DNA of 38,114 bases, taken from contig NIVC01004686.1 in assembly GCA_002269645.1 (NCBI GenBank), positions 1-38,114 on the forward strand, given 5' to 3'. Positions 2,523 through 34,808 of this stretch are shown here, one piece after another. The notes beneath the pieces are model-generated. The model had not been told where the DNA came from, did not search any database, and was given only the letters and a program-made list of their open reading frames with translations. The translations under genes were made by a program, and so were the position numbers. Positions within the stretch are counted from its first letter, which is position 1, and each line of letters begins with the position of its first letter. The DNA is from Macrostomum lignano. Lineage: Eukaryota.

Positions 2523-3050
2523 TCAAGCAGCGAATCCGCCAGCAGCAAAGAACTCTGTCCCAGGCGTAGACACCAGCTGTACAACTTCTGGAGAGAACAC
2601 GCCAACCGAACCGTTGGCCCGCCGGCCTCGCCAAAGAGTGCCGTTGACCCCGGCCGGCTGGCACTGGCCCAGCAGGGTGACGGTCTCGCCAGCCACGAGA
2701 GCCAGATGTCCCGGGACGGCATAGTCCCGCAGCGCCAGGGCGTAGCCAACAACGCTACTGCGTCTTGGAGTTGACGTGCCCAGCAGGGCGGCGCCAGATG
2801 CCGGTTGAGCAGTGCCGAGGCCGCTGCTCTGGCTGTTGCTTCTCGAGTACACAGCAGGCGGCTGCTGCTGCTGCGTTGGAGGCGGAGGCGGCGGCGGCAA
2901 CGGCCGAGGCAAATCCAGTTTGATCGGCCTGGCCAGAGTGGCGTCCAGATCGGTGAAGCATTCGCACAACGAGTTGAGGCTATAGTGCTCCACTAGAGCT
3001 GGGATGCTGGGGAATGTCCTGATCTCGCCCAGGTAGTAACAGTTGGAGGC
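2523..3050 (-). CDS. VAV: Vav-family GEF exon 4 (last): second half of SH2, Pro/Gln linker, C-terminal SH3
   Basis: Acceptor cacactccag|GCC at 3051/3050, phase 0. Reads ASNCYYLGEIRTFPSIPALVEHYSLNSLCECFTDLDATLARP (Vav SH2 end), then ALRDYAVPGHLALVAGETV..LWRGRRANGSVGVFSPEVV (SH3). TGA at 2525-2523. Confidence 0.92.
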   Translation of the reverse strand, partial: ASNCYYLGEIRTFPSIPALVEHYSLNSLCECFTDLDATLARPIKLDLPRPLPPPPPPPTQQQQPPAVYSRSNSQSSGLGTAQPASGAALLGTSTPRRSSVVGYALALRDYAVPGHLALVAGETVTLLGQCQPAGVNGTLWRGRRANGSVGVFSPEVVQLVSTPGTEFFAAGGFAA

Positions 3051-3139
3051 CTGGAGTGTGGAGTGTTGTGGAATTAATGAGCTATTAAAGTGCTTAAAGT
3101 GCTCAGTTAGACACTGAATAACATACGTGTTAGTACATT

Positions 3140-5715
3140 AAATAGCCTACTTATTAACCTACTAATTAACCTACTAAATAACCCACACATTAACCTACTA
3201 AATAACCTACATATTAACCTACTAATTAACGTACTAAATAGCCTAACTCATCAACCTACTCATTAACCTACAAATTAACGTAAGAAAAAGCCTACTCTAT
3301 AACCTACTAAAAAACCCACTTATTAACCTACTAAATAACCTACACATTAACCTACTAAATAACCTACCTATTAAGCTACTAATTAACCTACTAATTAACC
3401 TACTAAATAACCCACTTATTAACCTACTAAATAACCCACTTATTAACCTACTAATTAACCTACTATTACCAACTAAATAACCCACACATTAAACTACTAA
3501 ATAGCCTAACTCATCAACCTACTAAATAACCTACTAATTAACGTAAGAAAAAGCCTACTCTATAACCTACTAAAAAACCCACTTATTAACTTACAAAATA
3601 ACCTACACATTAACCTACTAAATAACCTACCTATTAAGCTACTAATTACCTACTAAATAACCCACTTACTAACCTACTAAATAACCAACTTATTAACCTA
3701 CTAAATAACCCACTTATTAACCTACTAAATAACCCACTTACTAACCTACTAAATAACCCACTTATTAACCTACTAAATAACCAACTTATTAACCTACTAA
3801 ATAACCCACTTATTAACCTACTAAATAACCCACTTATTAACCTACTAAATAACCCACTTACTAACCTACTAAATAACCCACTTATTAACCTACTAAATAA
3901 CCCACTTACTAACCTACTAAATAACCCACTTATTAACCTACTAAATAACCCACTTACTAACCTACTAAATAACCCACTTATTAACCTACTAAATAACCCA
4001 CTTACTAACCTACTAAATAACCCACTTATTAACCTACTAAATAACCAACTTATTAACCTACTAAATAACCCACTTACTAACCTCCTAAATAACCAACTTA
4101 TTAACCTACTAAATAACCAACTTATTAACCTACTAAATAACTTACTTATTAACCTACTAAATAACCCACTTATTAACCTACTAAATAACCCACTTACTAA
4201 CCTACTAAATAACCAACTTATTAACCTACTAAATAACCCACTTATTAACCTACTAAATAACCAACTCATAACCTACTAAATAACCCACTTACTAACCTAC
4301 TAAATAACCCACTTATTAACCTACTAAATAACCCACTTATTAACCTACTAAATAACCCACTTACTAACCTACTAAATAACCAACTTATTAACCTACTAAA
4401 TAACCAACTTATTAACCTACTAAATAACCCACTTATTAACCTACTAAATAACCCACTTATTAACCTACTAAATAACCCACTTATTAACCTACTAAATAAC
4501 CCACTTACTAACCTACTAAATAACCCACTTATTAACCTACTAAATAACCCACTTACTAACCTACTAAATAACCCACTTATTAACCTACTAAATAACCCAC
4601 TTATTAACCTACTAAATAACCAACTTATTAACCTACTAAATAACCCACTTATTAACCTACTAAATAACCCACTTACTAACCTACTAAATAACCCACTTAT
4701 TAACCTACTAAATAACCCACTTATTAACCTACTAAATAACCCACTTATTAACCTACTAAATAACCCACTTATTAACCTACTAAATAACCCACTTACTAAC
4801 CTACTAAATAACCCACTTATTAACCTACTAAATAACCCACTTATTAACCTACTAAATAACCCACTTATTAACCTACTAAATAACCCACTTATTAACCTAC
4901 TAAATAACCCACTTACTAACCTACTAAATAACCCACTTACTAACCTACTAAATAACCCACTTATTAACCTACTAAATAACCAACTTATTAACCTACTAAA
5001 TAACCCACTTATTAACCTACTAAATAACCCACTTATTAACCTACTAAATAACCAACTTATTAACCTACTAAATAACCCACTTATTAACCTACTAAATAAC
5101 CCACTTACTAACCTACTAAATAACCAACTTATTAACCTACTAAATAACCAACTTATTAACCTACTAAATAACCAACTTATTAACCTACTAAATAACCCAC
5201 TTACTAACCTACTAAATAACCCACTTATTAACCTACTAAATAACCAACTTATTAACCTACTAAATAACCCACTTATTAACCTACTAAATAACCCACTTAC
5301 TAACCTACTAAATAACCCACTTACTAACCTACTAAATAACCCACTTACTAACCTACTAAATAACCCACTTACTAACCTACTAAATAACCCACTTACTAAC
5401 CTACTAAATAACCCACTTACTAACCTACTAAATAACCAACTTATTAACCTACTAAATAACCCACTTATTAACCTACTAAATAACCCACTTATTAACCTAC
5501 TAAATAACCCACTTACTAACCTACTAAATAACCCACTTATTAACCTACTAAATAACCAACTTATTAACCTACTAAATAACCAACTTATTAACCTACTAAA
5601 TAACCAACTTATTAACCTACTAAATAACCCACTTATTAAACTACTAAATAACCCACTTACTAACCTACTAAATAACCCACTTATTAACCTACTAATTAAC
5701 CTACTAAACAACCTA
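3140..5715. repeat. 24-bp minisatellite (aacctactaaataaccc/aacttat/ct) filling vav intron 3
   Basis: About 100 copies. Homogeneous 3650-5700, degenerate at both edges. Lies inside the inferred intron 3051-5787. Confidence 0.97.
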
Positions 5716-5787
5716 CTGACAAACTTAGAGACGGATCCAGACAGACCCATTAGTCACCCGATAACGCATGACTGCTGCAGAACTGAC

Positions 5788-6158
5788 CTGTTGAATTCTC
5801 ATATGCTTGATGGTCTCCCTATACCGCAGGCTGATCGCATAGTCCATGCTGCTAGTTAGGCTAAGCCGCACTAGAAATGTGCCAACCGGCTGACCCAGCA
5901 GGGCGTCACGCGCCATCTCGCGGGACATGGGACCGACGAACCAGTCGTGATGGTCCAGGGGGTGGCCAGTGCTGTCTGTCGATCCGCCTCGACTAAACCG
6001 CCGCGTGATCTGGTCAGGAGCAGGAGGAGGCTGGTCGCCGTTGACCGGCTGGGGCTTCGGCGACGGCGAGAATTCCTCGATAACAGCAGCGGGAATTCTC
6101 AATGGCATCAGCTGATTGGGAGCGGACGGCGAGAACTCCGTGGCGTCTGTTGAATGTC
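5788..6158 (-). CDS. VAV: Vav-family GEF exon 3: linker and first half of SH2
   Basis: Acceptor ctccgcag|GA (phase 1) and donor CAG|gtcagt (phase 0). SH2 motif WFVGPMSREMARDALLGQPVGTFLVRLS..YAISLRYRETIKHMRI. Phases match the neighbouring exons. Confidence 0.92.
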
Positions 6159-6194
6159 CTGCGGAGTCGAGTGGGGATTGAGCGCTTGAGAGGC

Positions 6195-6765
6195 CGATTC
6201 TCAGGGTGGATTAGAGGGAGATTCTCAGGGTGGATTAGAGGGCGATTCTCAGGGTAGATTAGAGGGCGATTCTCAGGGTGAATTAGAGGGCGATTCTCAG
6301 GGTAGATTAGAGGGAGATTCTCAGGGTGGATTAGAGGGCGATTCTCAGGGTAGATTAGAGGGCGATTCTCAGGGTGAATTAGAGGGCGATTCTCAGGGTA
6401 GATTAGAGGGAGATTCTCAGGGTGGATTAGAGGGCGATTCTCAGGGTAGATTAGAGGGCGATTCTCAGGGTGAATTAGAGGGCGATTCTCAGGGTAGATT
6501 AGAGGGAGATTCTCAGGTGGATTAGAGGGCGATTCTCAGGGTAGATTAGAGGGCGATTCTCAGGGTGGATTTGAGGGAGATTCTCAGGGTGGATTAGAAG
6601 GAGATTCTCAGGGTGGATTTGAGGGCGATTCTCAGGGTGGATTTGAGGGCGATTCTCAGGGTGGATTTGAGGGCGATTCTCAGGGTGGATTGGAGGGCGA
6701 TTCTCAGGGTGGATTAGAGGGAGATTTTCAGGGTGGATTAGAGGGAGATTTTCAGGGTGGTTCTC
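6195..6765. repeat. 24-bp minisatellite (ttctcagggtggattagaggg[c/a]ga) filling vav intron 2
   Basis: About 23 tandem copies inside intron 6159-6837. Shares the ttctcagggtg core with the array at 150-648. Confidence 0.96.
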
Positions 6766-6837
6766 AGTACTGAATACACTGACGCTTATGGGAAATACAA
6801 AGCATGCTACTCATAAGTAGCCACAATCGAAACTCAC

Positions 6838-7327
6838 TAGTCTGAACAGCTGGCGCACTATTGGGACCTCCTGGCGCGGAATTGGCACCGGCGCCAAATT
6901 CGCCAAAGCGCGGCGCAATGATCTCAGAATTGGACCGATCGGGCCGGCTGGGAATGCAGGCGGGATGCACTTTCTTGCCAGTCTTCCTGCACCTGTAGCC
7001 CTGATAGAAGCAGCCAAGAATGAGCCTATTGCACACCGAACAATAGGTTGGCAGATCGAACGTGGCCGGCTCGAAGTAGTGGCCAAACATGTTGAAATTC
7101 GGCGGAGCGAGCACCTCTTTAGAGCGCTGGAATGCTTCCAGCCAGCGCCGCCGGGACTCCTTGGTCTTGGCTATGAACACCATGTTGATGCCGTCTTTGG
7201 AGCCCTGCTGCTGCTGCTGCTGTTGCGGTTGCGGCTGGTCGCTGACTGAGAACAGCCAGGTCCATTTGGTGTTGCCAGCAGGTTGCGGCTGCTGCTGTTG
7301 CTGGGGTGACACCTGCTGCTGAGCAGT
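6838..7327 (-). CDS. VAV: Vav-family GEF exon 2: PH C-terminal part and C1 domain
   Basis: Acceptor ccactgcag|ACT (phase 0) and donor ACTA|gtgagt (phase 1). Contains VFIAKTKESRRRWLEAF (PH C-terminal helix) and HYFEPATFDLPTYCSVCNRLILGCFYQGYRC (Vav C1). Confidence 0.92.
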
Positions 7328-7369
7328 CTGCAGTGGCAATTATTAGCGATTTGTAGCCCCACTATCTCA

Positions 7370-7835
7370 TTCCATACGATCTCTAATCTCACGATAAAAA
7401 TGCCTAATCTCACCCTAAAGAACCTATGATCTCAACCTATGGAATTATGGAATCTCCAATCTAACCCTAAAAACTCCAGTCTTCCAATAAAGAATCTCCG
7501 AACTCACCCTAAAGAATGTCTAATCGCACCCTAAAAAACTATAATCTCACTCTAAACAATCTTCTTTTTCACTCTATAGAATCTCTTATCTCACCCTTTA
7601 GAATCTCCTATCTTACTCTACACAGAATCTCTTATCCTATCTTACTCTAGATAGAATCTTTTATCTCACCCCATAGAATCTCCTATCCTATTCTAACCTA
7701 TAGAATCTCTAATCTCACCCTGTAAAATCTCTTATCACACCCTATAGAATCTCCTATCCTACTCTACAGAATCTCCTTTCTCACCCTAGCGAATTGTCAA
7801 TCTATTGATAATATCTAATCTCACCCTATACAGTC
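7370..7835. repeat. Degenerate C-rich tandem repeat (atctcaccctatagaatct-like) in vav intron 1
   Basis: Recurrent ctcaccct[a/t] and gaatctc motifs. It is a reverse-complement relative of the tcagggtga repeats. Confidence 0.75.
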
Positions 7836-7914
7836 TTAAATAAGACTCTGAGAAGTCTAAAGAATAAAGAAGCCAATAAACAAATAAAAAAGCAGCACAA
7901 GCCGGAAGCCTCAC

Positions 7915-9666
7915 CGTCTGTTGCAGCTGTGCAACGCTCTTCTTCCCAGTCGGCGGGCAGTCAATCGGTTTAATAACCAGATCGGTTTTAATGGCGAACA
8001 CATTTTTAAATATGTAGCCTTCTTTGCCGGGTCCCCGACTCTTTACCAGCATGCAGATCCGGTTCCATAGGAAACAGTAGCGCAATTTACTACCGGAAGT
8101 AGGCCTGTTAGGATCGTTAGCCACCTTCAATTCTTCGTCAATCTGCAAGCGGCCATAATCGATGAGTCGCATAGAGGGTGGCAGGTCTAAATCGTCAATG
8201 GTGTTCTGAATCTGATCAATCAATGCCATCATTTCCAGGTCGCGTTTCACTTCGTTAACATAGTCCGCAACTTCGCACATCGCTTCGTGAGCTTCGCGTA
8301 ATTGGGATAAATCTAATTGGGAAGCTGACTGCTGCTGCTGCGGCTGAGCTGCCAGCTTCTCTTCAATACTGATGAGGCTGCGGAGTAGCAGGTGATACTT
8401 GAGCACCCGTTGCACCGGTACGGTGAGATATTCGCTCAGTTTAAACAATGCCCGACAATTGCTGAGATGCTGTTGCAATTCGTCGCTTTTACGCTTGTCG
8501 CATTTGCAAGCGTTCTCAACCAGCTTCTGCGCCCTGGCCAAGTGGCCGCTGTACTGACCATAAACCAGCATCCGGTCTTTGAATGAGCTGAACACTTGAG
8601 GCAGAGACTTAGCGTGCTCAGGCTTCAACACTACAGCAATTTGAAGCTCCTGCAGCAGTTTTTGATGCAAGCTGGACAGCTCGGGCAGAAATTTGAATAT
8701 TGTATCGACTTCATCGGCTGACCAAGCCGACTGCTTGGCTTTCATTGGCTGCATCACGTCTTCTACTAGGAGACGAAGTGTCTCAACGTAGTTACGTTCG
8801 GTGTCTACCATCTCCTGGATGCACAGATCCTGCGGTGTCAGACCTTTGACCGGCTGCTGCTGCTGCTGTTGTTGCTGTTGCTTCTGTTGCTGTTGCTGCT
8901 GCTGAGGCTGCTGTGGCTGCTTCCCCCTCAAGTTGATGATGCAATCGTAGACTTTCTCTTCGACTTGTTGAGAGCAGCAGCTGCTGACGCCGCTGGTGTT
9001 GAGACTGACATCAGCAATTGCTTGGTTCAACTGCTGCTGCTGCTGCTGCTGGTCTGTACCGTGTTTCTGCTGCAGCCGGTGCTTGCTGTGCACAGGCGCT
9101 GGCTCCGGCACTGAGTCTGCAACAAAACTGTAATAGTCTGACTCCGCCTGCGGACTGCATCGGGCAATTTCGAACCCGGCAATGCCACTCTGCCTAGCCC
9201 TGGGACACCTGGACAAGGTTGACAGCGCATCAATAATGCCAATTATATTCTCCTGTTCAAGCAGATCCTCGGCGCGAAACAGGTCAGATCGTTTTAAACC
9301 GAAATAAGATTCGCACTGATTCAGAAAAGCGCCAATATTCTTTTTAAATACGAACGGAGAATTCAGCGTCATCAGTTTGAATCCGTCAAGAGTTTTCAGA
9401 GTGATGTCGTTGCAGCTGAGCGCCGGCAGGATGTGGCACAGTAAAATGCCATCCTTTAATAAGCTCAGCAGATCCACCACTGTAGCCTGCGGATCGCCAA
9501 GCACAGTCTGAGCAGTCTGCAAAATATCCGGCACATTTTCTAAGCACCGGAACAGCCACTCTGCGCAGGGTCGCCATTGATTTTTAACGGCTTCATCCGA
9601 ACTGCTACTAAAAGTAGCATTGTTATTAGTTGACGCCAGATCAGGTGTTGCTACTGCAGTGGACAT
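7915..9666 (-). CDS. VAV: Vav-family GEF exon 1: CH, acidic region, DH (RhoGEF), PH N-terminal part
   Basis: First ATG at 9666 (the track's 9711 start is TTG). CH: LKDGILLCHIL..NIGAFL..FGL...LF. Regulatory Tyr candidate EEKVYDCI. DH: CIQEMVDTERNYVETL, LSEYLTVPVQRVLKYHLLL, VADYVNEVKRD. PH: DYGRLQIDEELKV. Donor ACG|gtgagg. The four exons total 3141 nt, or 1046 aa plus stop. Confidence 0.95.
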
Positions 9667-9809
9667 TGTTGTATCGATTGGTAGCGGCGGCAATTGGCGA
9701 CGACCCGACAATGGGCGGCCAGATTTTGGGCTGCAAGTTTTTTTGGATCGGCTGCTTTTAGCGTTTCACATTTGATTTAGAATTTTACATTTTAATAACT
9801 TAAACAATC

Positions 9810-11065: not shown

Positions 11066-11634
11066 TAACCCTCCTCTCAAGTATGTCGTCAAGCATGTAA
11101 ACTTATTGTGCCTTGAGGGTTGGTCCCAAAAAAACTGATGCAGATTAGCACTTACGCTCACTAGGAAGACAATTCAAACTCAACTTATAGATGCAATACT
11201 GCAGCAAAAAAAACCAGTCAAATCTAAAATTCATCGGCCTCTCCTAAATATCGCCAGAAAATGCACGAAAAAGTTGATGCCCGTTTCGAAATTTCTCGAA
11301 TGGGAGATTTCTACCAAATATCCCATTGGCCACGGAGTGCAGGAGCTGCATGAAACGATCTAGAAGCCCTGATAGATAGCAAATGACGGTTAAAATAGGA
11401 AATTCAGAGCAAAAAACCCAGATAAGGACTGGAAGCAAAAACGGTCAATAGAGTGACTTACTATACTCTACACTTCAGAATCCTTTCTTATCATCAACTG
11501 CAGGATTTAATAAGAAATTGAGCACTAACTCACTTTGCCAAGACTTAGTGATGGGTGAACTGGCGCACTTAAAATGAACTGGATGGATATGAGGAAGCCT
11601 ATGAGGAAACTTTTGAGTGGCCAACAGCCCTGCA

Positions 11635-12262
11635 ATTGGGGATCTGGGAGACTGGCCCCAACAACTGGGGATCTGAGAGGATGCTGGTCCAGCAACTGGG
11701 GATCTGGGAGGCTGGCCCAGCAACTGACACTCTGGGAGGCTGGCCCAGCAACTGGGGATCTGGGAGGCTGGCCCAGCAACTGGGGATCTGGGAGGCTGGC
11801 CCAGCAACTGGGGATCTGGGAGGCTGGTCCAGCAACTGGGGATCTGGGAGGCTGGCCCAGCAACTGGGGATCTGGGAGGCTGGCCCAGCAACTGAGGATC
11901 TGGGAGGCTGGCCCAGCAACTGACACTCTGGGAGGCTGGCCCAGCAACTGAGGATCTGGGAGGCTGGCCCAGCAACTGGGGATCTGGGAGGCTGGCCCAG
12001 CAACTGAGCATCTGGGAGGCTGGCCCAGCAACTGACACTCTGGAGGCTGGCCCAGCAACTGAGGATCTGGGAGGCTGGTCCAGCAACTGACACTCTGGGA
12101 GGCTGGTCCAGCAACTGGGGATCTGGGAGGCTGGCCCAGCAACTGAGGATCTGGGAGGCTGGTCCAGCAACTGGGGATCTGGGGGGCTGGTCCAGCAACT
12201 GAGGATCTGGGAGGCTGGCCCAGCAACTGACACTCTGGGAGGCTGGCCCAGCAACTGAGGAT
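11635..12262. repeat. 28-bp GC-rich minisatellite, array 1 (cagcaactgaggatctgggaggctggcc)
   Basis: About 22 copies with variants ctggggatc, ctgacactc and ggtcc. Confidence 0.97.
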
Positions 12263-13092: not shown

Positions 13093-13745
13093 AGATCTGG
13101 GAGGCTGGCCCAGCAACTGAGGATCTGGGAGGCTGGCTCAGCAACTGAGGATCTGGGAGGTTGGCTCAGCAACTGACACTCTGGGAGGCTGGCTCAGCAA
13201 CTGAGGGTCTGGGAGGCTGGCCCAGCAACTGAGGATCTGGGAGGCTGGCCCAACAACTGGGGATCTGGGAGGCTGGCCCAGCAACTGACACTCTGGGAGG
13301 CTGGCTCAGCAACTGAGGATCTGGGAGGCTGCATGTCCCAGCAACTGAGGATCTGGGAGGCTGGCCCAGAAACTGAGGATCTGGGAGGCTGTCCCAGCAA
13401 CTGAGGATCTGGGAGGCTGGCTCAGCAACTGAGGATCTGGGAGGCTGCATGTCCCAGCAACTGAGGATCTGGGAGGCTGTCCCAGCAACTGAGGATCTGG
13501 GAGGCTGGCCCAGCAACTGAGGATCTGGGAGGCTGTCCCAGCAACTGAGGATCTGGGAGGCTGGCTCAGCAACTGAGGATCTGGGAGGCTGGCTCAGCAA
13601 CTGAGGATCTGGGAGGCTGGCCCAGCAACTGGGGATCTGGGAGGCTGGTCCAGCAACTGGGGATCTGGGAGGCTGGCCCAGCAACTGACACTGGGAGGCT
13701 GGCCCAGCAACTGAGGATCTGGGAGGCTGGAGCAGCAACTGACAC
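13093..13745. repeat. 28-bp GC-rich minisatellite, array 2
   Basis: Same unit and orientation as array 1. Private variants are ggctca, gctgtccc and gctgcatgtccc. Confidence 0.97.
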
Positions 13746-15661: not shown

Positions 15662-16126
15662 TCAACAGTTAGCGGGCATATAAATCGGATTATGAAACGA
15701 GGTGCCACCGCCGCCGATGCTCACGCCGCCAAAGACGCCGCCGCCGCCAGAGCCGGCGTCGAGATTCAACTGCGGTCGGTAACCGGCAGCCCAGCGGCCG
15801 CGCTTCCAGATGCAGAAGCCCAGAACGCCAACGCCGGCAACGCCTAGCGCGCAGACAAGCACGATGACAGTCAGGACACCGATGCTGACGCCGCCGCTAT
15901 GCTGGTGGCTGTCTGGCTCGGCATGTCGGTCCGAGTTGGCCTCAGATTCACCCGGACACAACGGTACCGGACAGAATTCCAGTTTTAATGTGTAGTTTTT
16001 GTTGCCAGGTAGGTTGTGACGCGCGAAACAGACCGGCCGACCGACGCCCAGAGCCAAGCCGTTGACGCCGCCGGTGACAGATGTTGGCGGTGAGCGACAG
16101 AAATTAGCCGCTTCGCCAAGGGTTTC
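15662..16126 (-). CDS. C-type lectin/kringle receptor exon 3 (last): second half of kringle, TM helix, cytoplasmic tail
   Basis: Acceptor ctcacccaag|GAA (phase 0). Reads ETLGEAANFCRSPP..RPVCF..LEFCPVPLC (kringle C3-C6), TM IGVLTVIVLVCALGVAGVGVLGFCIW followed by KRGR, and tail ..TSFHNPIYMPANC stop. Confidence 0.88.
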   Translation of the reverse strand, partial: ETLGEAANFCRSPPTSVTGGVNGLALGVGRPVCFARHNLPGNKNYTLKLEFCPVPLCPGESEANSDRHAEPDSHQHSGGVSIGVLTVIVLVCALGVAGVGVLGFCIWKRGRWAAGYRPQLNLDAGSGGGGVFGGVSIGGGGTSFHNPIYMPANC

Positions 16127-16467
16127 CTTGGGTGAGGTTAAAAAAATATTACTTACGATACATATCGGCAGACGGAGATAGCTACAGTATAGAAAACAGA
16201 CCGATGCATGAAGTTATTTTTCGATACATATCGGCACATAAGATATGTACATTACTACATTGACTAGTTTATACAAAATAATAAACCGGGATGGCATACA
16301 TACAGCAGAGGCCCAAAATACATAAACAACAATAAAGTAAATATTTATATTTTGGAAATTTGGGTAAACAGCAGGAGTAACCATAAACTTATTTATTAAC
16401 TACAATGCCTCGTCAGCTAAGTAGTTTTATATTTCAATCTTATTTTATCAGACATCACATAACTAAC

Positions 16468-17061
16468 CTGACTATTGTCGGTCTCAATATCCACCACCTC
16501 GCTAGCAAACGGAGATCCTATCGGCAGCAGGTGCATAGCCGTATTCGAGTCATTGGTATTATTGTAAAATCGATAAACATCGGTCTGCTCGTAGATCAAT
16601 CTAACTAAATCCCATCGAACGCATTCTCGACCGTCTATAGATCGACTAGCGTAGCCGGAATAGCGCTTAGCAACGCCATAGCAACCGATGTTTTTATTAT
16701 GATTAGTATCAGAGTCTGGCGATGCCAAATCAGCAATAGCGGCAGCCTTACAAACGAATGGTTTCGGCTTGCCGCAGTCCTCGGCTGGACCGCCGCTGAT
16801 TCTATTCAAACCCATGACCGACGGAGTGGCCCTGTTGTACAGTCGGTAACCATAGCAACCAGACAGTTTGTCCAAGTTGTAATGACGAAATTCTGGCAGT
16901 ACATAGTCGAATCGAACAGGATTGAATTTGTCGCTATCACTACTACTAGCAGTAGCCCAATTCAAGCCAGTAATCTGTTCAGTGTTGGAACGCAAATTTA
17001 GCCAAATATCGCTGGGCGGCGGGTTACTGATTGATGAAGCCAAACTGCGAATAAAATGTAC
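16468..17061 (-). CDS. C-type lectin/kringle receptor exon 2: end of CTLD7 and first half of kringle
   Basis: Acceptor cattttcag|GTA and donor CAG|gttagt, both phase 0 (alternative donor GAG|gtggtg 30 nt earlier). Contains DIWLNL..EDCGKPKPFVCK and GCYGVAKRYSGYASRSIDGRECVRWD. Confidence 0.85.
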
Positions 17062-17269
17062 CTGAAAATGTTTGTTGTTGTTATTAAATGTCATAGACTG
17101 TACGTTATTGAAATATTTGCATTTGAACTTCTACAGTCGCTATTGTCTAAAGCAAAAAAGCATCAACTCTGAAAAGAATCGCTAGAGTCATTGCCAACAA
17201 CTCACTAGTGACTATCGCCTCTGGGGCAACTCGTGAATTTTTAAAGACTAGAATCCATCTAATGCGACG

Positions 17270-17450: not shown

Positions 17451-17746
17451 CTTAAATACCACTTTACGGGGGCAAATCACCTGCGTCGCCCTAAAGCCGT
17501 TTCAGATTTGCAGGCAATAAAACACTTTAAAGTGATTCTTAAGCAACTCTTTGACTTTTTGGCGGCTTGTACCATACCATGACATCTCGTCGTTTTAGAG
17601 TAGTTTAGAGTCATTCCTTCCAAGTTTACCTGCGTAATCTGCAACGACTCTGGGATCACAGATGACGGATTTTCGTGCATACAAGCACCAGATGAATTTG
17701 ACCGAGCACGGAATCTATTCCATAAAGTTAAGTTAATTAGGCTCAC

Positions 17747-20700
17747 CTCAGACGACGCCTCCAACCAAAGTAGTTCAGCGCTATCATTTTTACAATTAGT
17801 TTGAGCAGTTTCAAAATCTGCCGCCGCACTGTGAAATCTATAACACCAAGTTCCATTGAAGGCTACATAGCCATCCTTGCATATCTTAGGCTGCGGAGAA
17901 GACGGCGGTATCACAGTAAGCGGCCTACGGCACAGAGCCGGCAAAGGCAAGCTGCACAGCTCGGCTAAATGATAGCCAGATTTGCTTAGCAATGGATGGT
18001 ATCTAGTAGCTAAACAATGCGTTGACGGTATAGATGGCGCGTGAGGCCACACCAGAAAGTTCACCTTGGAACCGTCCAGCCAATTAAAGGCGCTACCGGC
18101 CCATTGCAAACCAAGCCAGACTAAGCCGGCTCTTCTACCTAGGCTAGCAACTAGGCTAACTAGAAAATCGTGCTGACCAGAAGTCTGATAGGACGCTAAA
18201 TCGCCGTCCAGACTCTGACAGCTGGAGCGAGCATCGGCAAATCTAGCCGGCTTAGGTAGCAGGCGATAACAAGCGGTGTTATCTGGAGTTGCTAGCCAGT
18301 CTGCTGGACAGTAACGCTCAACCTTCGAACTATTACCAGTCGACGGCTGAGAAGTAGAAGCATCCTGATCGGGCAACTTTGACACTAAAGTTTTACACAC
18401 TACCGACAAAGACTCTCCACAATCTCGATCATACCAAAGTCCCGAGCGTAATAGATTCTTAGATGACGAATATTCTGAACTCTTTATAAGTTGCGTCATC
18501 ATCGCGCCGCACTGACCGTAAAGATCTGGTTTGCTATTGTCAAAGTTAACGTACTGAACCGGAGTACCATCTGACCAAGTTGTCAATTTATCTGGAACTT
18601 GCTCGTAAGCTTCGTTCAAGCCAAGCCAAACTAAACCATGGGCTAGATGCAACTTTCTAACAAAGTTGTTCTCAGACTCCGATTCGATAGAAGCCAAATT
18701 GCTAGCATTGCTTGAGTCGATTTTTTGACAGGCAGCAAAAGCTTCAAACCAGTTATAAGTTTTGTTAGTTAGCACCCGATACGAGTAACACCGTCTACCA
18801 TCGTCCGATAGTCTCTGACCATTAATGCTCTGGCATGATTCAGCAAAACTAAGAACTTTTGGCGTGGCGGTTTTCACGGGTGGCATAGTTGTCATGGCAG
18901 CGGATAGAGTCGATTGAACCGGAGTCGAGTATTTATTAGTAACATTTGGCGCAGCCTGACATAGTACAAGCCTCTTTGCAGCGTTGCAGTCATTTGTCAG
19001 ATGCCATATAAAGCCTTTACTACTGTCAGATAAAACGTAGGCGCATTGAAAGGATGATTGTATCTTAATGCTATTAGCTGAATGCGGTGGATAATAATCA
19101 AACTGAGTAGAATCGGTCCACGTCGGATAGAGAAGCCCAGACGAACGACGAATGCTGAGACCAAGCCAGGCTCCATAAGTGTTTGAAGTGGGTAGCAACT
19201 TTGCGACAACGGAGGCCTTAATGCTCGAGTGTAAGCTAGCAACAAAAGCTGATGGAAATAATCCTTGGCAGGCGATGTTGGCGTTGTGCCAATCGGAATA
19301 GTTCGAACTTGTTGCTAGACATTTATTGTCGGCTAAGATAAAACCCCGCGGACATGTTGTCTCTACAATGGCAGTTGTAGCCGCAGTTGGAGAATGACTA
19401 ATAGCCCTCGTTTCCGACTGAGGCTTTGGATAGCGACAAGCGGGTAAAAGATTGGCGCACTGAGCACTGCTATTTTGGTTAATCAAGCCGCCAGTACCTG
19501 TTGAAAAGGCTAGACAGGAGCCATTAGCCTGTGGCAGGCTATCTGGTAGAGACAGCCAACCTGCATCAAATGAAACAGGTTTATCAATAGCGTAATAACG
19601 ATTTGGCTGCAGTCCAAGCAACGATACTAAAGCTAGCTGAGCTGGTCTATCAAACCAAACAGCGCTAGCATTGTACTTTTCCGAGCACCAGTCGGTTATT
19701 GAAGAATTACCAGCAATTGGGGTATCGCCAAGGTAGTAGCAAGAAGAATCAAAATTAACAAATCCAGGCAGACAACTGACGCCACTATTAAGAAAGTTGG
19801 TCAACTTCGAATCGAACGGGTTACTAGCATCAACACTGGCAGGCGTATGACAGAGGCTGTATAAACTAGCGGAATTTGCATTGCAATCCAGACTGCGCCA
19901 TGTAGCTGTACCGTTGCCAATAGCAACGCAAGCCTTGTCAGTCGCAGGCTGATTGGCTGACCATGCAGTGAGCAGAACAGAAGCCTTCTCAGACTGATTG
20001 TGCCACAAATAACCTCGACCAGGCACGAAGCGTAAACCAAAAACCAGTGGATGCTTATCAGCCAACACTGTAGCAACCTGTTGAGCAGTCCAATCATTCA
20101 GCATTGCTGGGAGATAATTTGAGCCAAGACTAGCGCATGCATCATCAGCGATTCCGGGAACAACAGCGTAGCAACGATCAGAGATATAATGCACAGTTGC
20201 CTTAGTTTTGCCAGCAATTTTAGGACAGTAACCGCCTGTAATTTGCAAATTGGAGCTGGGAACTGCCGGATTCACAGCCTGTCGGGCGCAAAGTGCGCGT
20301 CTTGGAGTGGACTCGGATTTATCGAATCTCATCTGTAGGCTAGCACGTGTTGGTGTGCTACTGTTGCTACTACTGTTAGTGGTGCTATTCCCCTCAATGG
20401 ATTCTTGCAGTATTAGATAGCCGAAACCTTTAGCATCAGTAGGCGAAGGGTCAAAGACTAGTCTTAGTGGAGACAGACTTCCATCGATATAAGTATCGTT
20501 AAGCCAGATTACCCGATTATTAACCAGGTTTCGATGCGCTGCAATCCAGTAAGTGCTGTTGATGTTGGTAACATTTAACTGAGAATTCAGTGCTGCTTCC
20601 AGTTGTTCGACAAACAAAGTATCTCGCAGGAATGTCAGATGGAAATCTTTGTTATCGCCAAGACTGCGACATTTTGCCTCAGCCTGTCTGTAGCTTCCCA

Positions 20701-20836
20701 AGAAGCTGTCAGATAGAAATACACAATCTCCAGTGCTACCAACTGAAAGCCAACCCCTGCTTTTAGGGCATGGATCAGCAGCAGTAGCAGTTGCAATTAA
20801 AAGCAGGGCTAGGCCAAGTAGATTGACCATTGCCAT
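17747..20836 (-). CDS. C-type lectin/kringle receptor exon 1: signal peptide and CTLD1-7 (mannose-receptor-like array)
   Basis: ATG at 20836 gives MAMVNLLGLALLLIATATA (signal peptide). Seven Cys-patterned CTLDs (C-x-x-G-W/F..CY..A..C..L..WLGL..W..C...C). Donor GAG|gtgagc joins in phase to give WLEASSE|VHFIRSL, restoring a typical CTLD helix. Total 4149 nt, or 1382 aa plus stop. Confidence 0.93.
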
Positions 20837-21199
20837 CAAGTCTTGTACTGTCTTCCTTTGTAAGCAAAACCAATGACTTCCTTGAAATGATCTAACGTCT
20901 TTGTTTGCAAATTCACATCAAAAAGAAAAGTTCTATGTTGTAGCGTATCTTTGATAATGAAATACAATTTACTATTCTATGTTGTAGCGTATCTTTGATA
21001 ATGAAATACAATTTACTATTTAGCTTGTATCCAAGTAAAATGTGTACTTTTAAAGTTTTTAGATGGCTTTTATGCATATATTTTCTAACTAATTTTTTCC
21101 TAGCCTGAAAAAATAGTGATCTTAACTTTTTTATTTCAAAGTTAAGGCTTTTAAAACAAAATTTAATCAACTTAATTTATGGGGCCAACAAACTAACCT

Positions 21200-30655: not shown

Positions 30656-30769
30656 GTGAGTAGATAACCATTAATATCCATGCGAAGTTACCTATTCCCT
30701 TTTAAAATTGTTCTTCAGATAATTTGTTACATTTGAGTGGGGTGGCGGTTGCCACCGGTTGGCCTAGCA

Positions 30770-31582
30770 ACTGTGGATCTGGGAGGCTGGCCCAGCAACT
30801 GAGGATCTGATAGGCTGACCCAGCAACTGAGGATCTGATAGGCTGGCCCAGCAACTGAGGATCTGGGAGGCTGGCCCAGCAACTGAGGATCTGGAGGCTG
30901 GCACAGCAACTGAGGATCTGGGAGGCTGGCCCAGCAACTGAGGATCTTAGGAGGCTGGCCCAGCAACTGAGGATCTGGGAGGCTGGCTCAGCAACTGAGG
31001 ATCTGGGAGGCTGGCCCAGCAACTGAGGATCTGGGAGGCTGGCCCAGCAACTGAGGATCTGGGAGGCTGGCCCAGCAACTGAGGATCTTAGGAGGCTGGC
31101 CCAGCAACTGAGGATCTTAGGAGGCTGGCCCAGCAACTGAGGATCTGGGAGGCTGGCCCAGCAACTGAGGATCTTAGGAGGCTGGCCCAGCAACTGAGGA
31201 TCTTAGGAGGCTGGCCCAGCAACTGAGGATCTTAGGAGGCTGGCCCAGCAACTGAGGATCTGGGAGGCTGGCCCAGCAACTGAGGATCTGGGAGGCTGGC
31301 TCAGCAACTGAGGATCTGGGAGGCTGGCCCAGCAACTGGGGATCTGGGAGGCTGGCCCAGCAACTGAGGATCTTAGGAGGCTGGCCCAGCAACTGAGGAT
31401 CTTAGGAGGCTGGCCCAGCAACTGAGGATCTTAGGAGGCTGGCCCAGCAACTGAGGATCTGGGAGGCTGGCCCAGCAACTGAGGATCTGAGAAGCTGGCC
31501 CAGCAACTGAGGATCTGGGAGGCTGGCCCAGCAACTGAGGATCTGGGAAACTCGTGGGCCAGCCAGCAGCTGAGGATCTGAG
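30770..31582. repeat. 28-bp GC-rich minisatellite, array 3, filling the thioredoxin-gene intron
   Basis: Same unit and orientation as the 11.6-kb and 13.1-kb arrays. Private variant gatcttagg. Lies inside intron 30656-31633. Confidence 0.97.
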
Positions 31583-32124: not shown

Positions 32125-32389
32125 GTTTGAGTCTGAGTTGCTTTTATCCACGTTTGTCTTTTTAGCTTATGGTTTCGGTCAGTTCATTGTGTTTACATGT
32201 ATTTATTTGTTTATTTATTTATCTTGCAAATAAATCAGTGTATGCGTGTTTATCGACTACTTTATTAGTTTATTTCATGCTATTTTTTAGCAATATGCCT
32301 GTTGAAATCGTTACCGTGACAGGAATCGGTAAAGAGTGATTGTAAAAAAAACTTGTGACTTATCAACGACGCAAACGACGACAATGCGA

Positions 32390-32625
32390 CTGTTAAGTCA
32401 CGAGAGCATCACGTGATCTGTAGAATCGTAAAAGAGGCTCATAAAATTTACTCAAGAGTCGGTATTTTTGGCGCTTAACTTTCTGCTAAACTCTATAAAC
32501 AAACTAAATTCGAAGTAGATTCGAAATGGCGGTTCTAATTCATAGTGACGCAGACGCGCTTTAGACGCAAGTCAGTGACTCTACAGCGGCTCTGGCACGC
32601 CTCAACTTCGACTCTACAACCTTTG
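32390..32625. mobile_element. Dispersed repeat (MITE-like), copy 2
   Basis: Diverged colinear match to 17270-17450. It also carries gacgcgctttagacgcaa, the near reverse complement of ttgcgtcaaaagcgcgtc in copy 1. Confidence 0.55.
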
Positions 32626-32691
32626 AGTTATCATAGAAGCAAACTGTGTTACACCATTTTCATGGAAATTAAAATTGAAGCCTAAATAAAT

Positions 32692-32765
32692 TCCATGTCC
32701 TCAGTAGCCTACTACTCAATCTCGATAGTAGAAAGTAGAACATTTTAGCATCATTTTTTGTGCGA
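32692..32765 (+). repeat. ~70-bp direct repeat, upstream copy (flanks the INCENP-like gene)
   Basis: tccatgtcctcagtagcctact..agtagaaagtagaacattttagcat aligns with 34738-34808 at roughly 80% identity by eye. A partial third copy lies at 32824-32858. Confidence 0.8.
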
Positions 32766-32889
32766 ACATTTAAAATAATAAATTTAAATAGATTTCATAT
32801 TCTCTATAGCCTGCTCAATTGGATCAGTAGAAAGTAAGACATTTTACCATTATTTTAGTTAAAAGCATTCTAATAGTTTTTTTTTTCAA

Positions 32890-33339
32890 ATGAATTTCAT
32901 GCGTCGTCAGCAGCAGCAGTGGCAGCGTCATGCTGCTGAACAGTTGCGCCGTCGTCAGCAACAGCTGGAAGCCAAACTGGCCGCCGACGCCGAGCGTCTT
33001 CAACGCCAACGCGACGAGGCAAACCGGTTAAGAGCTGAGAAAGCGGCTCAGGCTGAGGCGCGCAGAAGACGCGTGCTTGAGACGGCGCAGCGACTGCAGC
33101 GCGAGCGGCTGCAGCGACTGAAGTCTGGCGCTGCCGCAGCCCATGCTGTCCAGCCGCCTCAAACTCAGACAAAGAAAATTAATTTGAAAACTCCGCGGAC
33201 AGCAAAGCATCGACAGGTCTGCTGCGAGCAGTCCACCGCTGTCAAGGCTGTTTTTAGTGCTGCATCGCCGCAGCAGATGCAGAAATTGGAGCAGATTGTT
33301 GAACTGCGCAAGCCGCTGCTTGATAGTTGTGGAAGCTTG
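32890..33339 (+). CDS. INCENP: INCENP-like gene exon 1: R/E/Q-rich single-alpha-helix or coiled-coil segment
   Basis: ATG at 32890. Helix QRHAAEQLRRRQQQLEAKLAADAERLQRQRDEANRLRAEK. Donor TTG|gtaaga, phase 0, in frame with the acceptor at 34064. The gene assignment rests on the IN-box in exon 2. Confidence 0.65.
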
Positions 33340-33374
33340 GTAAGAATATACCAATTCCCTGACTTTCGTTTCAT

Positions 33375-34050
33375 CATCTATCTGCCCTGCTAGATATCAA
33401 TTTACTAAATCTATCTGCCCTGCTAGATATCAATCTACCAAATATATCTGCCCTGCTAGATATAAATCTACAAAATCTATCTGCCCTGCTATATATCAAT
33501 CTACCAAATCTATCTGCCCTGCTAGATTTCAATCTACCAAATCTATCTGCCCCGCTAGATATCAATCTACCAAATCTATCTGCCCTGCTATATATCAATC
33601 TACCAAATCTATCTGCCCCGCTAGATATCAATCTACCAAATCTATCTGCCCTGCTAGATATCAATCTACCAAATCTATCTGCCCCGCTAGATATCAATCT
33701 ACCAAATCTATCTGCCCTGCTAGATATCAATCTACCAAATCTATCTGCCCTGCTAGATATCAATCTACCAAATCTATCTGCCCCGCTAGATATCAATCTA
33801 CCAAATCTATCTGCCCTGCTAGATATCAATCTACCAAATCTATCTGCCCTGCTAGATATCAATCTACCAAATCTATCTGCCCCGCTAGATATCAATCTAC
33901 CAAATCTATCTGCTCTGCTATATATCAATCTACCAAATCTATCTGCCCCGCTAGATATCAATCTACCAAATCTATCTGCCCCGCTAGATATCAATCTACC
34001 AAATCTATCTGCCCTGCTAGATATCAATCTACCAATTCTATCTGCCCCGA
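33375..34050. repeat. 33-bp minisatellite (ctagatatcaatctaccaaatctatctgccc[t/c]g) filling the INCENP-like intron
   Basis: About 20 tandem copies inside intron 33340-34063. Confidence 0.97.
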
Positions 34051-34063
34051 AAAACCTCCGCAG

Positions 34064-34674
34064 GCCCTGCAGAGCTCCAATCAGCTGCAGCCGGAGTCTC
34101 AGCCTCCGCCGCCACCGACGCCGCTGCCTCCCCAACTCGACCTGTCAATCAGCGACGTCACAATTGAGTTTGAGCAGGACGAGAATCATCATCCCAGCCA
34201 GTTGCAGCAGCAGCAGCAGCAACAGATCGAAGACCAAGCCTCAAAAGCAGAAGACGCCAAGCCACCTGAAGCAGAGCCCGATGAAGATTTATCAGACTAT
34301 GAAGACGAAGAGGACGAGCCGGATTTCAGCCGGCCAGAATTCGCGGACGATGCTCTGGCCGACTGGGTGACGAGGACAATCTGCACTGGATGTTCTCTCG
34401 CCAGGCTGTCGAAGGCCTTCGCTGGTGGCACGTGTTCCGCCCAGTGGATGCCGGAAGCAAACTGGCCAACAGTCTGGTCCGAGCATTCGAAGATGTTGCG
34501 ACAAAAAGCGATTCAACAGATGACGTTAATGATGAGGATTCTATTAATAATAATGATGATGATGGCCATAGCCGGAGGAGGAGGCGGTGCTGGCTGAGTC
34601 GCCGCGGTAGCTCGGCTCTGTGGGACACTCCGCCTAGCGAAGTGGTTCGGCGTCAAATTCAAGATAATCGCTAG
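34064..34674 (+). CDS. INCENP: INCENP-like gene exon 2 with IN-box, interrupted by a 1-nt frameshift near 34360
   Basis: Acceptor cctccgcag|GCC. Frame A reads ALQSSNQ..DLSDYEDEEDEPDFSRPEFADDALA to 34360. The -1 frame continues RLGDEDNLHWMFSRQAVEGLRWWHVFRPVD..LVRAFEDV..RRGSSALWDTPP stop at 34674, paralleling the INCENP IN-box/TSS motif (RTSSAVWNSPP in vertebrates, recalled). Confidence 0.7.
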
Positions 34675-34737
34675 CAATTATGCGTAATTATCACCCATCA
34701 ATACTTATCAATTATTATAAAATTCTAAAAAGAAAAA

Positions 34738-34808
34738 TCCATGTCCTCACTAGCCTACTCAGTCGCGTGAGTAGAAATTAGGACATTTTACCATTCTTTT
34801 TTGCAAAG
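34738..34808 (+). repeat. ~70-bp direct repeat, downstream copy
   Basis: Aligns with 32692-32765. Contains the small hairpin ctactcagtcgcgtgagtag. Confidence 0.8.

What the first reader, a model, noticed from the sequence alone, without database searches (positions are those of the whole stretch)
32890..34674. Mini-INCENP: charged helix plus IN-box with no centromere-targeting N-terminus
The C-terminus (acidic patch, RPEFA, helical segment, WHVFRPV, RRGSSALWDTPP) follows the order of the INCENP IN-box that binds and activates Aurora B, including the phosphorylated SS motif. The predicted protein is only ~353 aa. It starts directly in the charged helix and lacks the Survivin/Borealin-binding CEN-box. 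Only ~760 bp separate it from the upstream gene's stop codon, leaving little room for missing exons. It could be a stand-alone Aurora activator uncoupled from the chromosomal passenger complex (for example germline or stem-cell specific), or a truncated duplicate. This is the best candidate for an undescribed system in the window.
Basis: partly seen in the sequence, partly recalled or inferred. Interest (0 to 1): 0.8.

Follow-up and report, generated by a model that had tools for sequence, protein, structure and literature searches.

The report
Small flatworm protein with INCENP-like tail
A short, expressed and conserved gene of the flatworm Macrostomum lignano ends in the phospho-serine motif that INCENP uses to switch on Aurora B kinase. 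The rest of the claimed Aurora-binding domain is not statistically detectable, and the worm has a separate, ordinary INCENP.

Summary
The window is the whole contig NIVC01004686.1 of the Macrostomum lignano Mlig_3_7 assembly.

**What is there**
- A two-exon gene lies at 32890-34674. Its intron (33340-34063) is filled by a 33-bp minisatellite.
- The 353-aa reading needs a one-base repair at 34370/34371. This contig lacks a C that three other assembly copies have.
- One of those copies is otherwise identical over 11.2 kb, with 0 substitutions and 4 homopolymer indels. The frameshift is therefore an assembly artefact, not a pseudogene.
- dN/dS between copies is 0.11.

**What the tests show**
- Only the C-terminal RRGSSALWDTPP (INCENP "TSSxxW" motif) is significant. 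hhalign gives P = 8e-5, and 0 of 20,000 shuffles reach its HMM score.
- Pfam INCENP_ARK-bind gives no hit even at E <= 10, and PDB INCENP chains do not match.
- The upstream "IN-box" part is only weakly alignable, and via W250 in ALADW rather than RPEFA.
- An exhaustive phmmer search finds no homologue outside M. lignano.
- Published annotation shows a canonical, neoblast-expressed INCENP elsewhere in the genome (Mlig013955).

**Verdict**
This is a real orphan gene with an INCENP-type Aurora activation tail and possibly a degenerate IN-box. A role as an Aurora partner is plausible (about 0.5) but unproven. Interest is moderate.

The parts
32890..33339 (+). Exon 1 (150 codons). ATG at 32890, a (CAG)4 run at 32908-32919, and an N-terminal ~75-residue R/Q/A/E/L-rich helix encoded up to about 33129, followed by a basic/disordered linker.
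   Evidence: ORF and GT donor. The same exon is present in the transcript-based models P0001 and P0036. AF2 places a helix at residues 2-75 with pLDDT about 97. GC is 58% against 34% in the flanking DNA.
32908..33159 (+). The only NCBI-annotated CDS for this gene on this contig: an 84-aa fragment (P0035), partial at both ends.
   Evidence: L004 positions 6001-6252 correspond to window 32908-33159.
33340..34063 (+). Single GT-AG intron of 724 nt.
   Evidence: Splice sites GTAAGA…CCGCAG. The junction matches P0001 and P0036. The intron is 361 nt in copy L001.
33376..34047 (.). 33-bp minisatellite, 20.4 copies at 95% match, occupying almost the whole intron.
   Evidence: Tandem Repeats Finder.
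34064..34674 (+). Exon 2. It encodes a P/Q-rich linker, the acidic patch, the degenerate IN-box-like segment, an acidic insert, a basic run, the TSS-like motif and the TAG stop.
   Evidence: GC is 56%.
34274..34324 (+). Acidic patch EPDEDLSDYEDEEDEPD. It sits in the same position as the acidic S/T/D-rich patch that precedes the IN-box in INCENPs (DLNSDDSTDDE, SEDEDE).
   Evidence: for coordinates. Alignment A3 of real INCENP C-termini. The greedy hhalign alignment pairs the two patches. The match could be driven by composition alone.
34370..34371 (+). Site of a missing C (GTGAC-CGAGG) that frameshifts this contig's copy. It is most likely an assembly indel error.
   Evidence: three other copies carry the C; window against NIVC01002769.1 shows 0 mismatches and 4 single-base indels in 11,211 bp.
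34349..34494 (+). Degenerate IN-box-like segment DALADW(V T)EDNLHWMFSRQAVEGLRWWHVFRPVDAGSKLANSLVRAFED. It aligns without gaps to PIPxW…L…Q…LFG of INCENP through W250, L256, Q263 and F274.
   Evidence: hmmsearch domain 2, conditional E 0.09. PSSM shuffle p = 0.014 for the C-terminal region and 0.16 for the whole protein. AF2 predicts low-confidence helices here. This support is weak.
34570..34635 (+). Basic run SRRRRRCWLS followed by RRGSSALWDTPP, an INCENP-type TSSxxW Aurora B/C phospho-activation motif. The paired serines lie 19-20 residues from the C-terminus.
   Evidence: hhalign P = 7.8e-5. hmmsearch conditional E 6e-5 and 7e-6. 0 of 20,000 shuffles reach the score. Chance estimate. The motif is identical in all four copies, with one synonymous change. 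Motif definition from PMC6639382.

Best explanation
**Shown**
- The locus is an intact, transcribed, selectively constrained gene that has been found only in M. lignano.
- It encodes 353 aa in two exons. Annotated copies are Mlig000369.g4 and Mlig006609.g1, and there are four near-identical copies in the redundant Mlig_3_7 assembly.
- This contig's frameshift is an assembly indel.

**Protein layout**
- an N-terminal helix of about 75 residues;
- a disordered basic and P/Q-rich middle;
- an acidic patch;
- a poorly conserved helical segment;
- an acidic insert;
- a C-terminal tail, RRRRRCWLSRRGSSALWDTPP, that reproduces the INCENP 'TSSxxW' motif.

**Inferred mechanism**
- The tail docks on an Aurora B-type kinase, as the phosphorylated INCENP tail does.
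- The arginine would pair with the phospho-serine and an αC glutamate. The paired serines would be phosphorylated by the kinase itself. The tryptophan would stack between two histidines. Together these would stabilise the activation loop.
- The preceding helical segment (W250…F274) may be a degenerate IN-box 'crown' on the N-lobe.
- The N-terminal helix would supply dimerisation or targeting.
- M. lignano has a separate canonical INCENP, so this protein would be an accessory Aurora partner. It could be an alternative activator or localiser. Alternatively, like experimentally over-expressed soluble IN-box, it could compete with INCENP and draw kinase away from the CPC.
- The likely origin is an old partial duplication of the INCENP 3' end, or convergent acquisition of the tail.
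For: **Gene reality**
- The transcript-based annotation has the same splice junction. PMC5730564 describes the RNA-seq-guided annotation.
- Three copies carry the intact ORF, and the window's frameshift is an artefact.
- dN/dS is 0.11, p = 1.2e-4. GC contrast separates exons from flanks.

**TSS motif**
- hhalign of 11 real INCENP C-termini against the C-terminus gives P = 7.8e-5 and 61% probability.
- hmmsearch gives conditional E 6e-5 and 7e-6.
- Shuffles reaching the observed score: 5 of 20,000 for the full IN-box HMM and 0 of 20,000 for the TSS HMM.
- All seven invariant residues R.SSA.W..PP match, with chance probability 1.8e-6 per protein.
- G at the T position is the C. elegans state. 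R891, S893, S894 and W897 are the functionally characterised residues (PMC6639382).
- The motif is near the C-terminus, as in INCENP, and is invariant in all copies.

**Colinearity**
- The greedy hhalign alignment runs acidic patch, W, L, Q, then the TSS motif in INCENP order; the F274 match belongs to the separate gapless alignment.

**Context**
- A canonical INCENP, survivin and Aurora genes exist in M. lignano and are neoblast-expressed (PMC5816591 supplement).
- Soluble IN-box is dominant-negative in HeLa cells (PMC4248066).
Against: - Pfam INCENP_ARK-bind does not hit at E <= 10, and no PDB INCENP chain matches.
- The candidate F881 region (KLA[N/D]SL[V/F]RAF) varies between copies.
- An insert of about 35 residues separates the helical segment from the TSS motif, unlike in known IN-boxes.
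- Exhaustive phmmer of the C-terminus against 1.84 billion representatives found no relative, not even the worm's own INCENP, at E <= 1e-3. Homology to INCENP is therefore unproven.
- RRxS is also a generic basophilic-kinase site.
- I found no expression pattern, localisation or interaction data for this gene.
- AF2 has low confidence outside the N-terminal helix.
Confidence: 0.5

Rival explanations
1. This is an orphan, fast-evolving, low-complexity nuclear or coiled-coil protein unrelated to INCENP. The C-terminal RRGSS is an ordinary basophilic-kinase (PKA/Aurora-type RRxS) site, and the W and PP that follow are coincidence. The protein has no specific relation to the chromosomal passenger complex.
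For: - No Pfam or PDB hit.
- No homologue in 1.84 billion representatives.
- Only a 12-16-residue stretch is significant, and the N-terminal IN-box part is at noise level for the whole protein (p = 0.16).
- Pairwise Smith-Waterman against vertebrate IN-boxes gives only p = 0.002 to 0.05.
Against: - All seven invariant positions of the INCENP tail match, plus three conservative ones, at the right distance from the C-terminus. Chance is 1.8e-6 per protein and 3.6e-5 per window, which survives a correction of 1e3.
- 0 of 20,000 shuffles reach the score.
- The motif is invariant across copies, whereas nearby residues vary.
- The acidic patch and the W…L…Q…F spacing are colinear with INCENP.
Confidence: 0.3
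2. This is a compact but genuine second CPC scaffold, not uncoupled from the CPC. The N-terminal 75-residue helix would join a helical bundle with survivin, with or without a borealin-like protein. That would make it a CEN-box analogue, so the protein would be a short INCENP paralogue that still localises like the CPC, as with paralogue switching in Oikopleura.
For: - A long, confidently predicted N-terminal helix with heptad-spaced leucines.
- CEN-box sequences are not conserved outside vertebrates, so absence of a Pfam hit says little.
- INCENP paralogues with divided labour exist in Oikopleura dioica (PMC6681789).
- Survivin is present in M. lignano.
Against: - No sequence similarity to any INCENP or borealin N-terminus.
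- The helix is very R/Q/E-rich, which is more typical of a single alpha-helix or a generic coiled coil.
- Nothing in these tools tests binding.
Confidence: 0.15
3. This is a truncated duplicate or pseudogene of INCENP that is decaying, which was the reader's alternative and is suggested by the frameshift in this contig.
For: - The window copy is frameshifted at 34370/34371.
- The NCBI model on this contig is only an 84-aa fragment.
Against: - The frameshift is one of four homopolymer indels, with zero substitutions, relative to an overlapping contig.
- Three copies are intact.
- dN/dS is 0.11.
- Spliced transcripts are annotated.
- There is no detectable similarity to a recent INCENP parent.
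Confidence: 0.05

Closest known systems
INCENP IN-box (Pfam PF03941 INCENP_ARK-bind; human INCENP 835-903, Xenopus 790-856, C. elegans ICP-1)
   Same: - The C-terminal R-x-S-S-A-x-W-x-x-P-P tail is about 20 residues from the end, with a basic cluster and an aromatic residue just upstream.
- G in place of T, as in C. elegans.
- An acidic patch lies N-terminal of the segment.
- W…L…Q…F spacing can be laid without gaps on PxW…L…Q…LFG.
- A long helix lies upstream.
   Different: - No Pfam hit.
- There is no P-x-W-A motif; the sequence is ALADWV.
- LFG is replaced by VFR, and the F881 region is uncertain and polymorphic.
- An acidic insert of about 35 residues separates the helical part from the TSS motif.
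- The whole protein is 353 aa, against roughly 600-900 aa.
- It is not the worm's INCENP orthologue, which is Mlig013955.
INCENP paralogue pairs (Oikopleura dioica INCENPa/INCENPb, PMC6681789; apicomplexan INCENP1/2, PMC13439184)
   Same: A second INCENP-like gene sits beside a canonical one, so division of labour for Aurora B localisation or activation is conceivable.
   Different: I did not examine the sequences or domain content of those paralogues. Here only the tail is recognisable, and no function is known.
Experimentally expressed soluble IN-box fragment (PMC4248066)
   Same: An IN-box-like module without recognisable centromere-targeting sequence. It predicts what such a protein could do, namely compete for Aurora B and delocalise it.
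   Different: That fragment's effect depends on W845 and F881 and not on the TSS motif. In the flatworm protein the TSS motif is the well-conserved part, and the W/F region is the doubtful part.
Other Aurora activators that work through short docking segments (TPX2 and Bora for Aurora A; from general knowledge)
   Same: A mostly disordered protein that would contact the kinase N-lobe or activation loop through short motifs.
   Different: No sequence similarity to them. The motif here is specifically the INCENP type.

Membership tests
INCENP IN-box (Pfam PF03941 INCENP_ARK-bind) | Significant match to the family HMM (Pfam gathering threshold). | tested here: not met
   No PF03941 hit at E <= 1 or E <= 10 for the spliced window model, a first-guess frameshift-joined C-terminal fragment (made before the copies were compared), P0001 and its C-terminus. 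phmmer against PDB also finds no INCENP chain.
INCENP IN-box | C-terminal TSS(xxW) phospho-activation motif: R-[T/G]-S-S-x-x-W (R891, S893, S894 and W897 of human INCENP). | tested here: met
   RRGSSALWDTPP at 34600-34635. hhalign P = 7.8e-5. hmmsearch conditional E 6e-5 and 7e-6. 0 of 20,000 shuffles reach the score. Motif definition from PMC6639382.
INCENP IN-box | W845-equivalent tryptophan in a P-x-W-A context at the start of helix αA, required for Aurora B binding. | tested here: inconclusive
Profile alignment places W250 (ALADWV) on the invariant W, with L256, Q263 and F274 on invariant or near-invariant columns. The score is at noise level: conditional E 0.09 and p = 0.014 to 0.16. The flanking P and A are absent.
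INCENP IN-box | F881-equivalent phenylalanine (L-E-D-I-F) needed for kinase activation. | tested here: inconclusive
   Candidates are KLANSL[V/F]RAF. Alignment needs 2-5 inserted residues, and one candidate F is V in this copy.
INCENP IN-box | Binds and activates Aurora B/C. | not testable with these tools
   No complex prediction or biochemistry was possible.
INCENP (full-length CPC scaffold) | N-terminal CEN-box helix that bundles with survivin and borealin. | tested here: inconclusive
   No Pfam INCENP_N or borealin-type hit. The protein does begin with a confidently predicted 75-residue helix, whose partners cannot be inferred from sequence.
INCENP (full-length CPC scaffold) | Is the organism's INCENP orthologue (reciprocal best hit to INCENP/ICP-1). 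| tested here: not met
   Published annotation assigns that role to Mlig013955.g2/4/5/6, with a 3,087-nt transcript, a PF03941 hit and reciprocal hits to human INCENP and C. elegans icp-1 (PMC5816591 supplement). The present protein has no hit to anything outside its own copies.
INCENP (full-length CPC scaffold) | Long charged helix (SAH or coiled coil) N-terminal of the IN-box. | tested here: inconclusive
   A helix is present at residues 2-75, but it sits at the extreme N-terminus, about 170 residues from the IN-box-like part. Its leucines are heptad-spaced, rather than showing a typical E/K/R single-helix pattern.

The most novel reading that the evidence does not exclude
A natural 'mini-INCENP': a 353-aa flatworm protein that keeps only the Aurora-activating tail and a degenerate IN-box, attached to a new N-terminal helix. 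It would act beside the canonical CPC, either as a stand-alone Aurora B activator at a different site or as an endogenous competitor that tunes how much kinase is in the CPC. It could be relevant to neoblast or germline divisions of a regenerating, neopolyploid animal.
Probability: 0.3. Interest if true: 0.6.

Novelty: new variant of a known kind. Interest (0 to 1): 0.4.

Why it matters
If the tail really engages an Aurora kinase, this would be a rare natural case of the INCENP activation module separated from the recognisable CPC localisation module.

- It would offer a handle on how Aurora B activity is partitioned between CPC-bound and other pools.
- M. lignano has transgenesis and RNAi, so the idea is testable there.
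- It would also show how far IN-box sequences can drift while keeping the TSSxxW tail. That matters for finding CPC components in divergent lineages, since the worm's canonical INCENP has no Schmidtea or Schistosoma homologue listed in its row of the published annotation table (PMC5816591 supplement).

If the resemblance is coincidental, the locus is just one more flatworm orphan gene. The main practical lesson would then be that this contig carries homopolymer indel errors that break ORFs.

Tried and rejected
- **38-nt GT..AG mini-intron (34367-34404).** I built it to restore the frame, giving 340 aa. I rejected it because three other copies have an uninterrupted frame through VTEDNLHWMFSRQ and the annotated proteins contain that peptide.
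- **Pseudogene reading of the frameshift.** Rejected on the indel-only difference from an overlapping contig and on dN/dS.
- **Pfam, three attempts, and PDB phmmer.** Both gave no INCENP hit.
- **Exhaustive phmmer of the C-terminal 138 aa.** It returned only the protein itself and a junk repeat ORF (P0002).
- **Fetching the worm's canonical INCENP for a pairwise comparison.**
  - A search with the human IN-box found only vertebrate last-exon fragments.
  - A search with a 129-sequence seed alignment found only INCENPs, nearly all vertebrate last-exon fragments, with one more divergent hit (P0061, organism not identified). That alignment used vertebrate backbones carrying synthetic TSS-motif variants, purely to widen the exact-word retrieval.
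  - No M. lignano protein passed E <= 10, so the comparison with Mlig013955 could not be made.
- **AF2 on the single sequence.** Only the N-terminal helix is confident, so I did not run a fold search because it would be meaningless.
- **Literature and supplement searches for expression data.** I searched for Mlig000369 and Mlig006609 and found nothing. The one relevant table is truncated in the library.
- **RPEFA as the PxWA equivalent.** Not favoured by either HMMER or hhalign.
Full report
**Origin of the window.** The only database relative of the predicted protein is a Macrostomum lignano hypothetical protein (BOX15_Mlig000369g4, P0001, 95% identity). An exact look-up shows that the window is the complete 38,114-bp contig NIVC01004686.1 of assembly GCA_002269645.1 (Mlig_3_7). 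The assembly was made from PacBio, Illumina and 454 data. It is known to be redundant, and its gene models come from genome-guided RNA-seq assembly (PMC5730564).

**Gene structure.** The ATG is at 32890.
- Exon 1 runs to 33339, with donor GTAAGA.
- The intron is 33340-34063. It is almost entirely a 33-bp minisatellite (20.4 copies) and ends in CCGCAG.
- Exon 2 runs from 34064 to the TAG at 34672-34674.
- The exon junction (…DSCGSL|ALQSS…) is the one used in the transcript-based NCBI proteins P0001 and P0036.
- Exons are 56-58% GC and the flanks 33-34%.
- The upstream same-strand gene (321 aa, no Pfam domain) ends at 32124 and has an AATAAA at 32229. The spacer is 765 bp, with 13-19 stop codons in each of the three forward frames.
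- An in-frame TAA lies at 32860. In copy L001 the spacer is only about 570 bp, because 208 bp (32293-32500) are absent.

**The 5' end.** The annotated CDSs of three copies are '5' partial' and begin inside the (CAG)4 run, 6-9 codons after the ATG. The M. lignano spliced leader ends in ATG (PMC8629364), and every CAG offers an in-frame AG acceptor. The mRNA may therefore start with an SL-donated AUG. This is inference. Either way the protein starts in the helix.

- As written in the window, the frame breaks after …RPEFADDALADW, because GTGACCGAGG reads GTGACGAGG at 34370/34371.
- The assembly holds four copies: the window, L003 (NIVC01002769.1), L001 (NIVC01002878.1) and L002 (NIVC01000265.1).
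- The other three encode an intact 353-aa protein.
- The window and L003 overlap over 11,211 bp with no substitution and four single-base indels, at least three of them next to short G/C runs. This is the signature of consensus errors, not of a diverged pseudogene.
- The NCBI model on this contig, and on L003, is only an 84-aa fragment (P0035, 32908-33159).
- With the C restored, the window copy differs from L001 by 10 synonymous and 4 non-synonymous changes. That gives dS 0.044, dN 0.0049 and dN/dS 0.11, with binomial p = 1.2e-4. The protein sequence is under purifying selection.

**Is it an IN-box? Standard searches.**
- Pfam INCENP_ARK-bind does not hit at E <= 10.
- phmmer against all PDB sequences finds no INCENP chain. 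The human IN-box finds them easily.
- An exhaustive phmmer of the C-terminal 138 residues against 1.84 billion representatives finds only itself and a junk repeat ORF.

**Is it an IN-box? Targeted tests.**
- I built an alignment of 11 real INCENP C-termini: nine vertebrate and two more divergent sequences of unidentified organism.
- hhalign against the flatworm C-terminus gives one local match, HKRTSSAVWNSPPLQG against SRRGSSALWDTPPSEV, with P = 7.8e-5 and probability 61%.
- hmmsearch with all filters off gives the same domain, at conditional E 6e-5, or 7e-6 with a TSS-only model.
- Among 20,000 composition-preserving shuffles, 5 reach the full-model score and 0 reach the TSS-model score.
- All seven residues that are invariant in the alignment (R.SSA.W..PP) are matched. 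Chance expectation is 1.8e-6 per protein of this composition and 3.6e-5 per six-frame window. It is the only R.SS..W in six frames.
- These are the residues shown structurally and kinetically to matter: R891, pS893, pS894 and W897. The literature calls this the 'TSSxxW motif', with GSS in C. elegans (PMC6639382).

**The rest of the IN-box is weak.**
- HMMER's best placement of the N-terminal half is a gapless alignment of PIPaW…L…Q…LFG on ALADW250…L256…Q263…F274. Its conditional E is only 0.09.
- A PSSM shuffle test gives p = 0.014 within the C-terminal region and 0.16 over the whole protein.
- A greedy hhalign extension is colinear, running acidic patch, W, L, Q, then the TSS motif. It has near-zero confidence outside the tail.
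- The candidate F881 region is polymorphic between copies (N/D and V/F).
- An acidic insert of about 35 residues separates the helical segment from the tail.
- In human cells W845 and F881, not the TSS motif, determine IN-box binding to Aurora B (PMC4248066). The best-conserved part here is therefore the activation and substrate element, not the binding element.

**Other features.** AF2 on the single sequence predicts a helix at residues 2-75 with pLDDT about 97 and is unconfident elsewhere. It shows low-confidence helices over the IN-box-like segment and a disordered tail. The helix has heptad-spaced leucines. Whether it is a coiled coil, a single alpha-helix or a bundle-forming 'CEN-box analogue' cannot be told from sequence.

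**Genomic context of the CPC.** Supplementary Table 2 of PMC5816591 lists a canonical INCENP in M. lignano.
- The genes are Mlig013955.g2/4/5/6, with a 3,087-nt trans-spliced transcript.
- It has a Pfam PF03941 hit of 23.7 bits and reciprocal hits to human INCENP and C. elegans icp-1.
- It falls in the class 'Neoblast, stringent'.
- The same table lists survivin (Mlig017541.g1) and Aurora kinases (Mlig021261.g1 and others).
- The gene studied here is therefore not the INCENP orthologue but an additional gene.
- I could not retrieve the Mlig013955 sequence. Two further database searches returned only INCENPs, nearly all vertebrate fragments, plus one more divergent hit (P0061) of unidentified organism. 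The decisive paralogy test remains open.
- No paper or held supplement mentions Mlig000369 or Mlig006609.

**Interpretation.**
- Most likely (about 0.5), this is an accessory Aurora-kinase partner that carries an INCENP-type activation tail and perhaps a degenerate IN-box. It would have arisen by an old partial duplication of the INCENP 3' end or by convergence.
- Whether it activates Aurora away from the CPC, competes with INCENP as soluble IN-box does experimentally, or joins the CPC through its N-terminal helix cannot be decided.
- The main rival (about 0.3) is an unrelated orphan protein with a coincidental motif.
- A decaying duplicate is very unlikely.

**Verdict.**
- Membership in the Pfam IN-box family was tested and not met.
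- If true, the finding is a new variant of a known kind.

Noticed in passing
window 27159, 34371, 37881, 38102: Four single-base indels, at least three next to short G/C runs, are the only differences from the overlapping contig NIVC01002769.1 over 11.2 kb, with 0 substitutions. The two contigs are unmerged copies of one locus, and this one carries consensus errors, one of which breaks the ORF.
   Followed up: yes
window 33376-34047 (intron); L001 10424-10784: The 33-bp minisatellite that fills the gene's only intron differs in copy number between assembly copies. The intron is 724 nt in three copies and 361 nt in L001.
   Followed up: partly
window 34736-34792, 32690-32750, 32811-32856: A short repeated element flanks the gene on both sides. 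The downstream copy folds into a good hairpin (-7.9 kcal/mol, z = -3.2), while the upstream copies are degenerate. It looks like a MITE-type insertion, but its family was not identified.
   Followed up: partly
window 32293-32500: A 208-bp segment in the spacer upstream of the gene is absent from the homologous copy L001. This is an indel in the putative promoter or outron region.
   Followed up: no
window 32908-32919 and annotated CDS starts of P0001, P0035, P0036: The annotated CDSs start at different CAG codons of a (CAG)4 run, downstream of the genomic ATG, and are flagged partial. The M. lignano spliced leader ends in ATG, so the start codon may be donated by trans-splicing.
   Followed up: partly
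window 11627-12262, 13094-13742, 30760-31548: The same 28-bp minisatellite family (TGGCCCAGCAACTGAGGATCTGGGAGGC) occurs as three arrays of 23-28 copies. The third lies between the two coding blocks of the gene upstream of the finding.
   Followed up: no
window 2523-9711, minus strand: A Vav-like guanine-nucleotide exchange factor gene (CH, RhoGEF, C1, SH2 and SH3 domains on successive ORFs). Its introns hold very large minisatellites, for example 24 bp x 107 copies at 3146-5717.
   Followed up: partly
window 17477-20839, minus strand: A single 1,120-aa ORF encoding a protein with at least three C-type lectin domains. It probably continues into the ORFs at 15662-17094.
   Followed up: no
PMC5816591 Supplementary Table 2, INCENP row: In the row for the canonical M. 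lignano INCENP (Mlig013955), the columns for Schmidtea and Schistosoma homologues are empty. No flatworm homologue is listed for it in that table.
   Followed up: no
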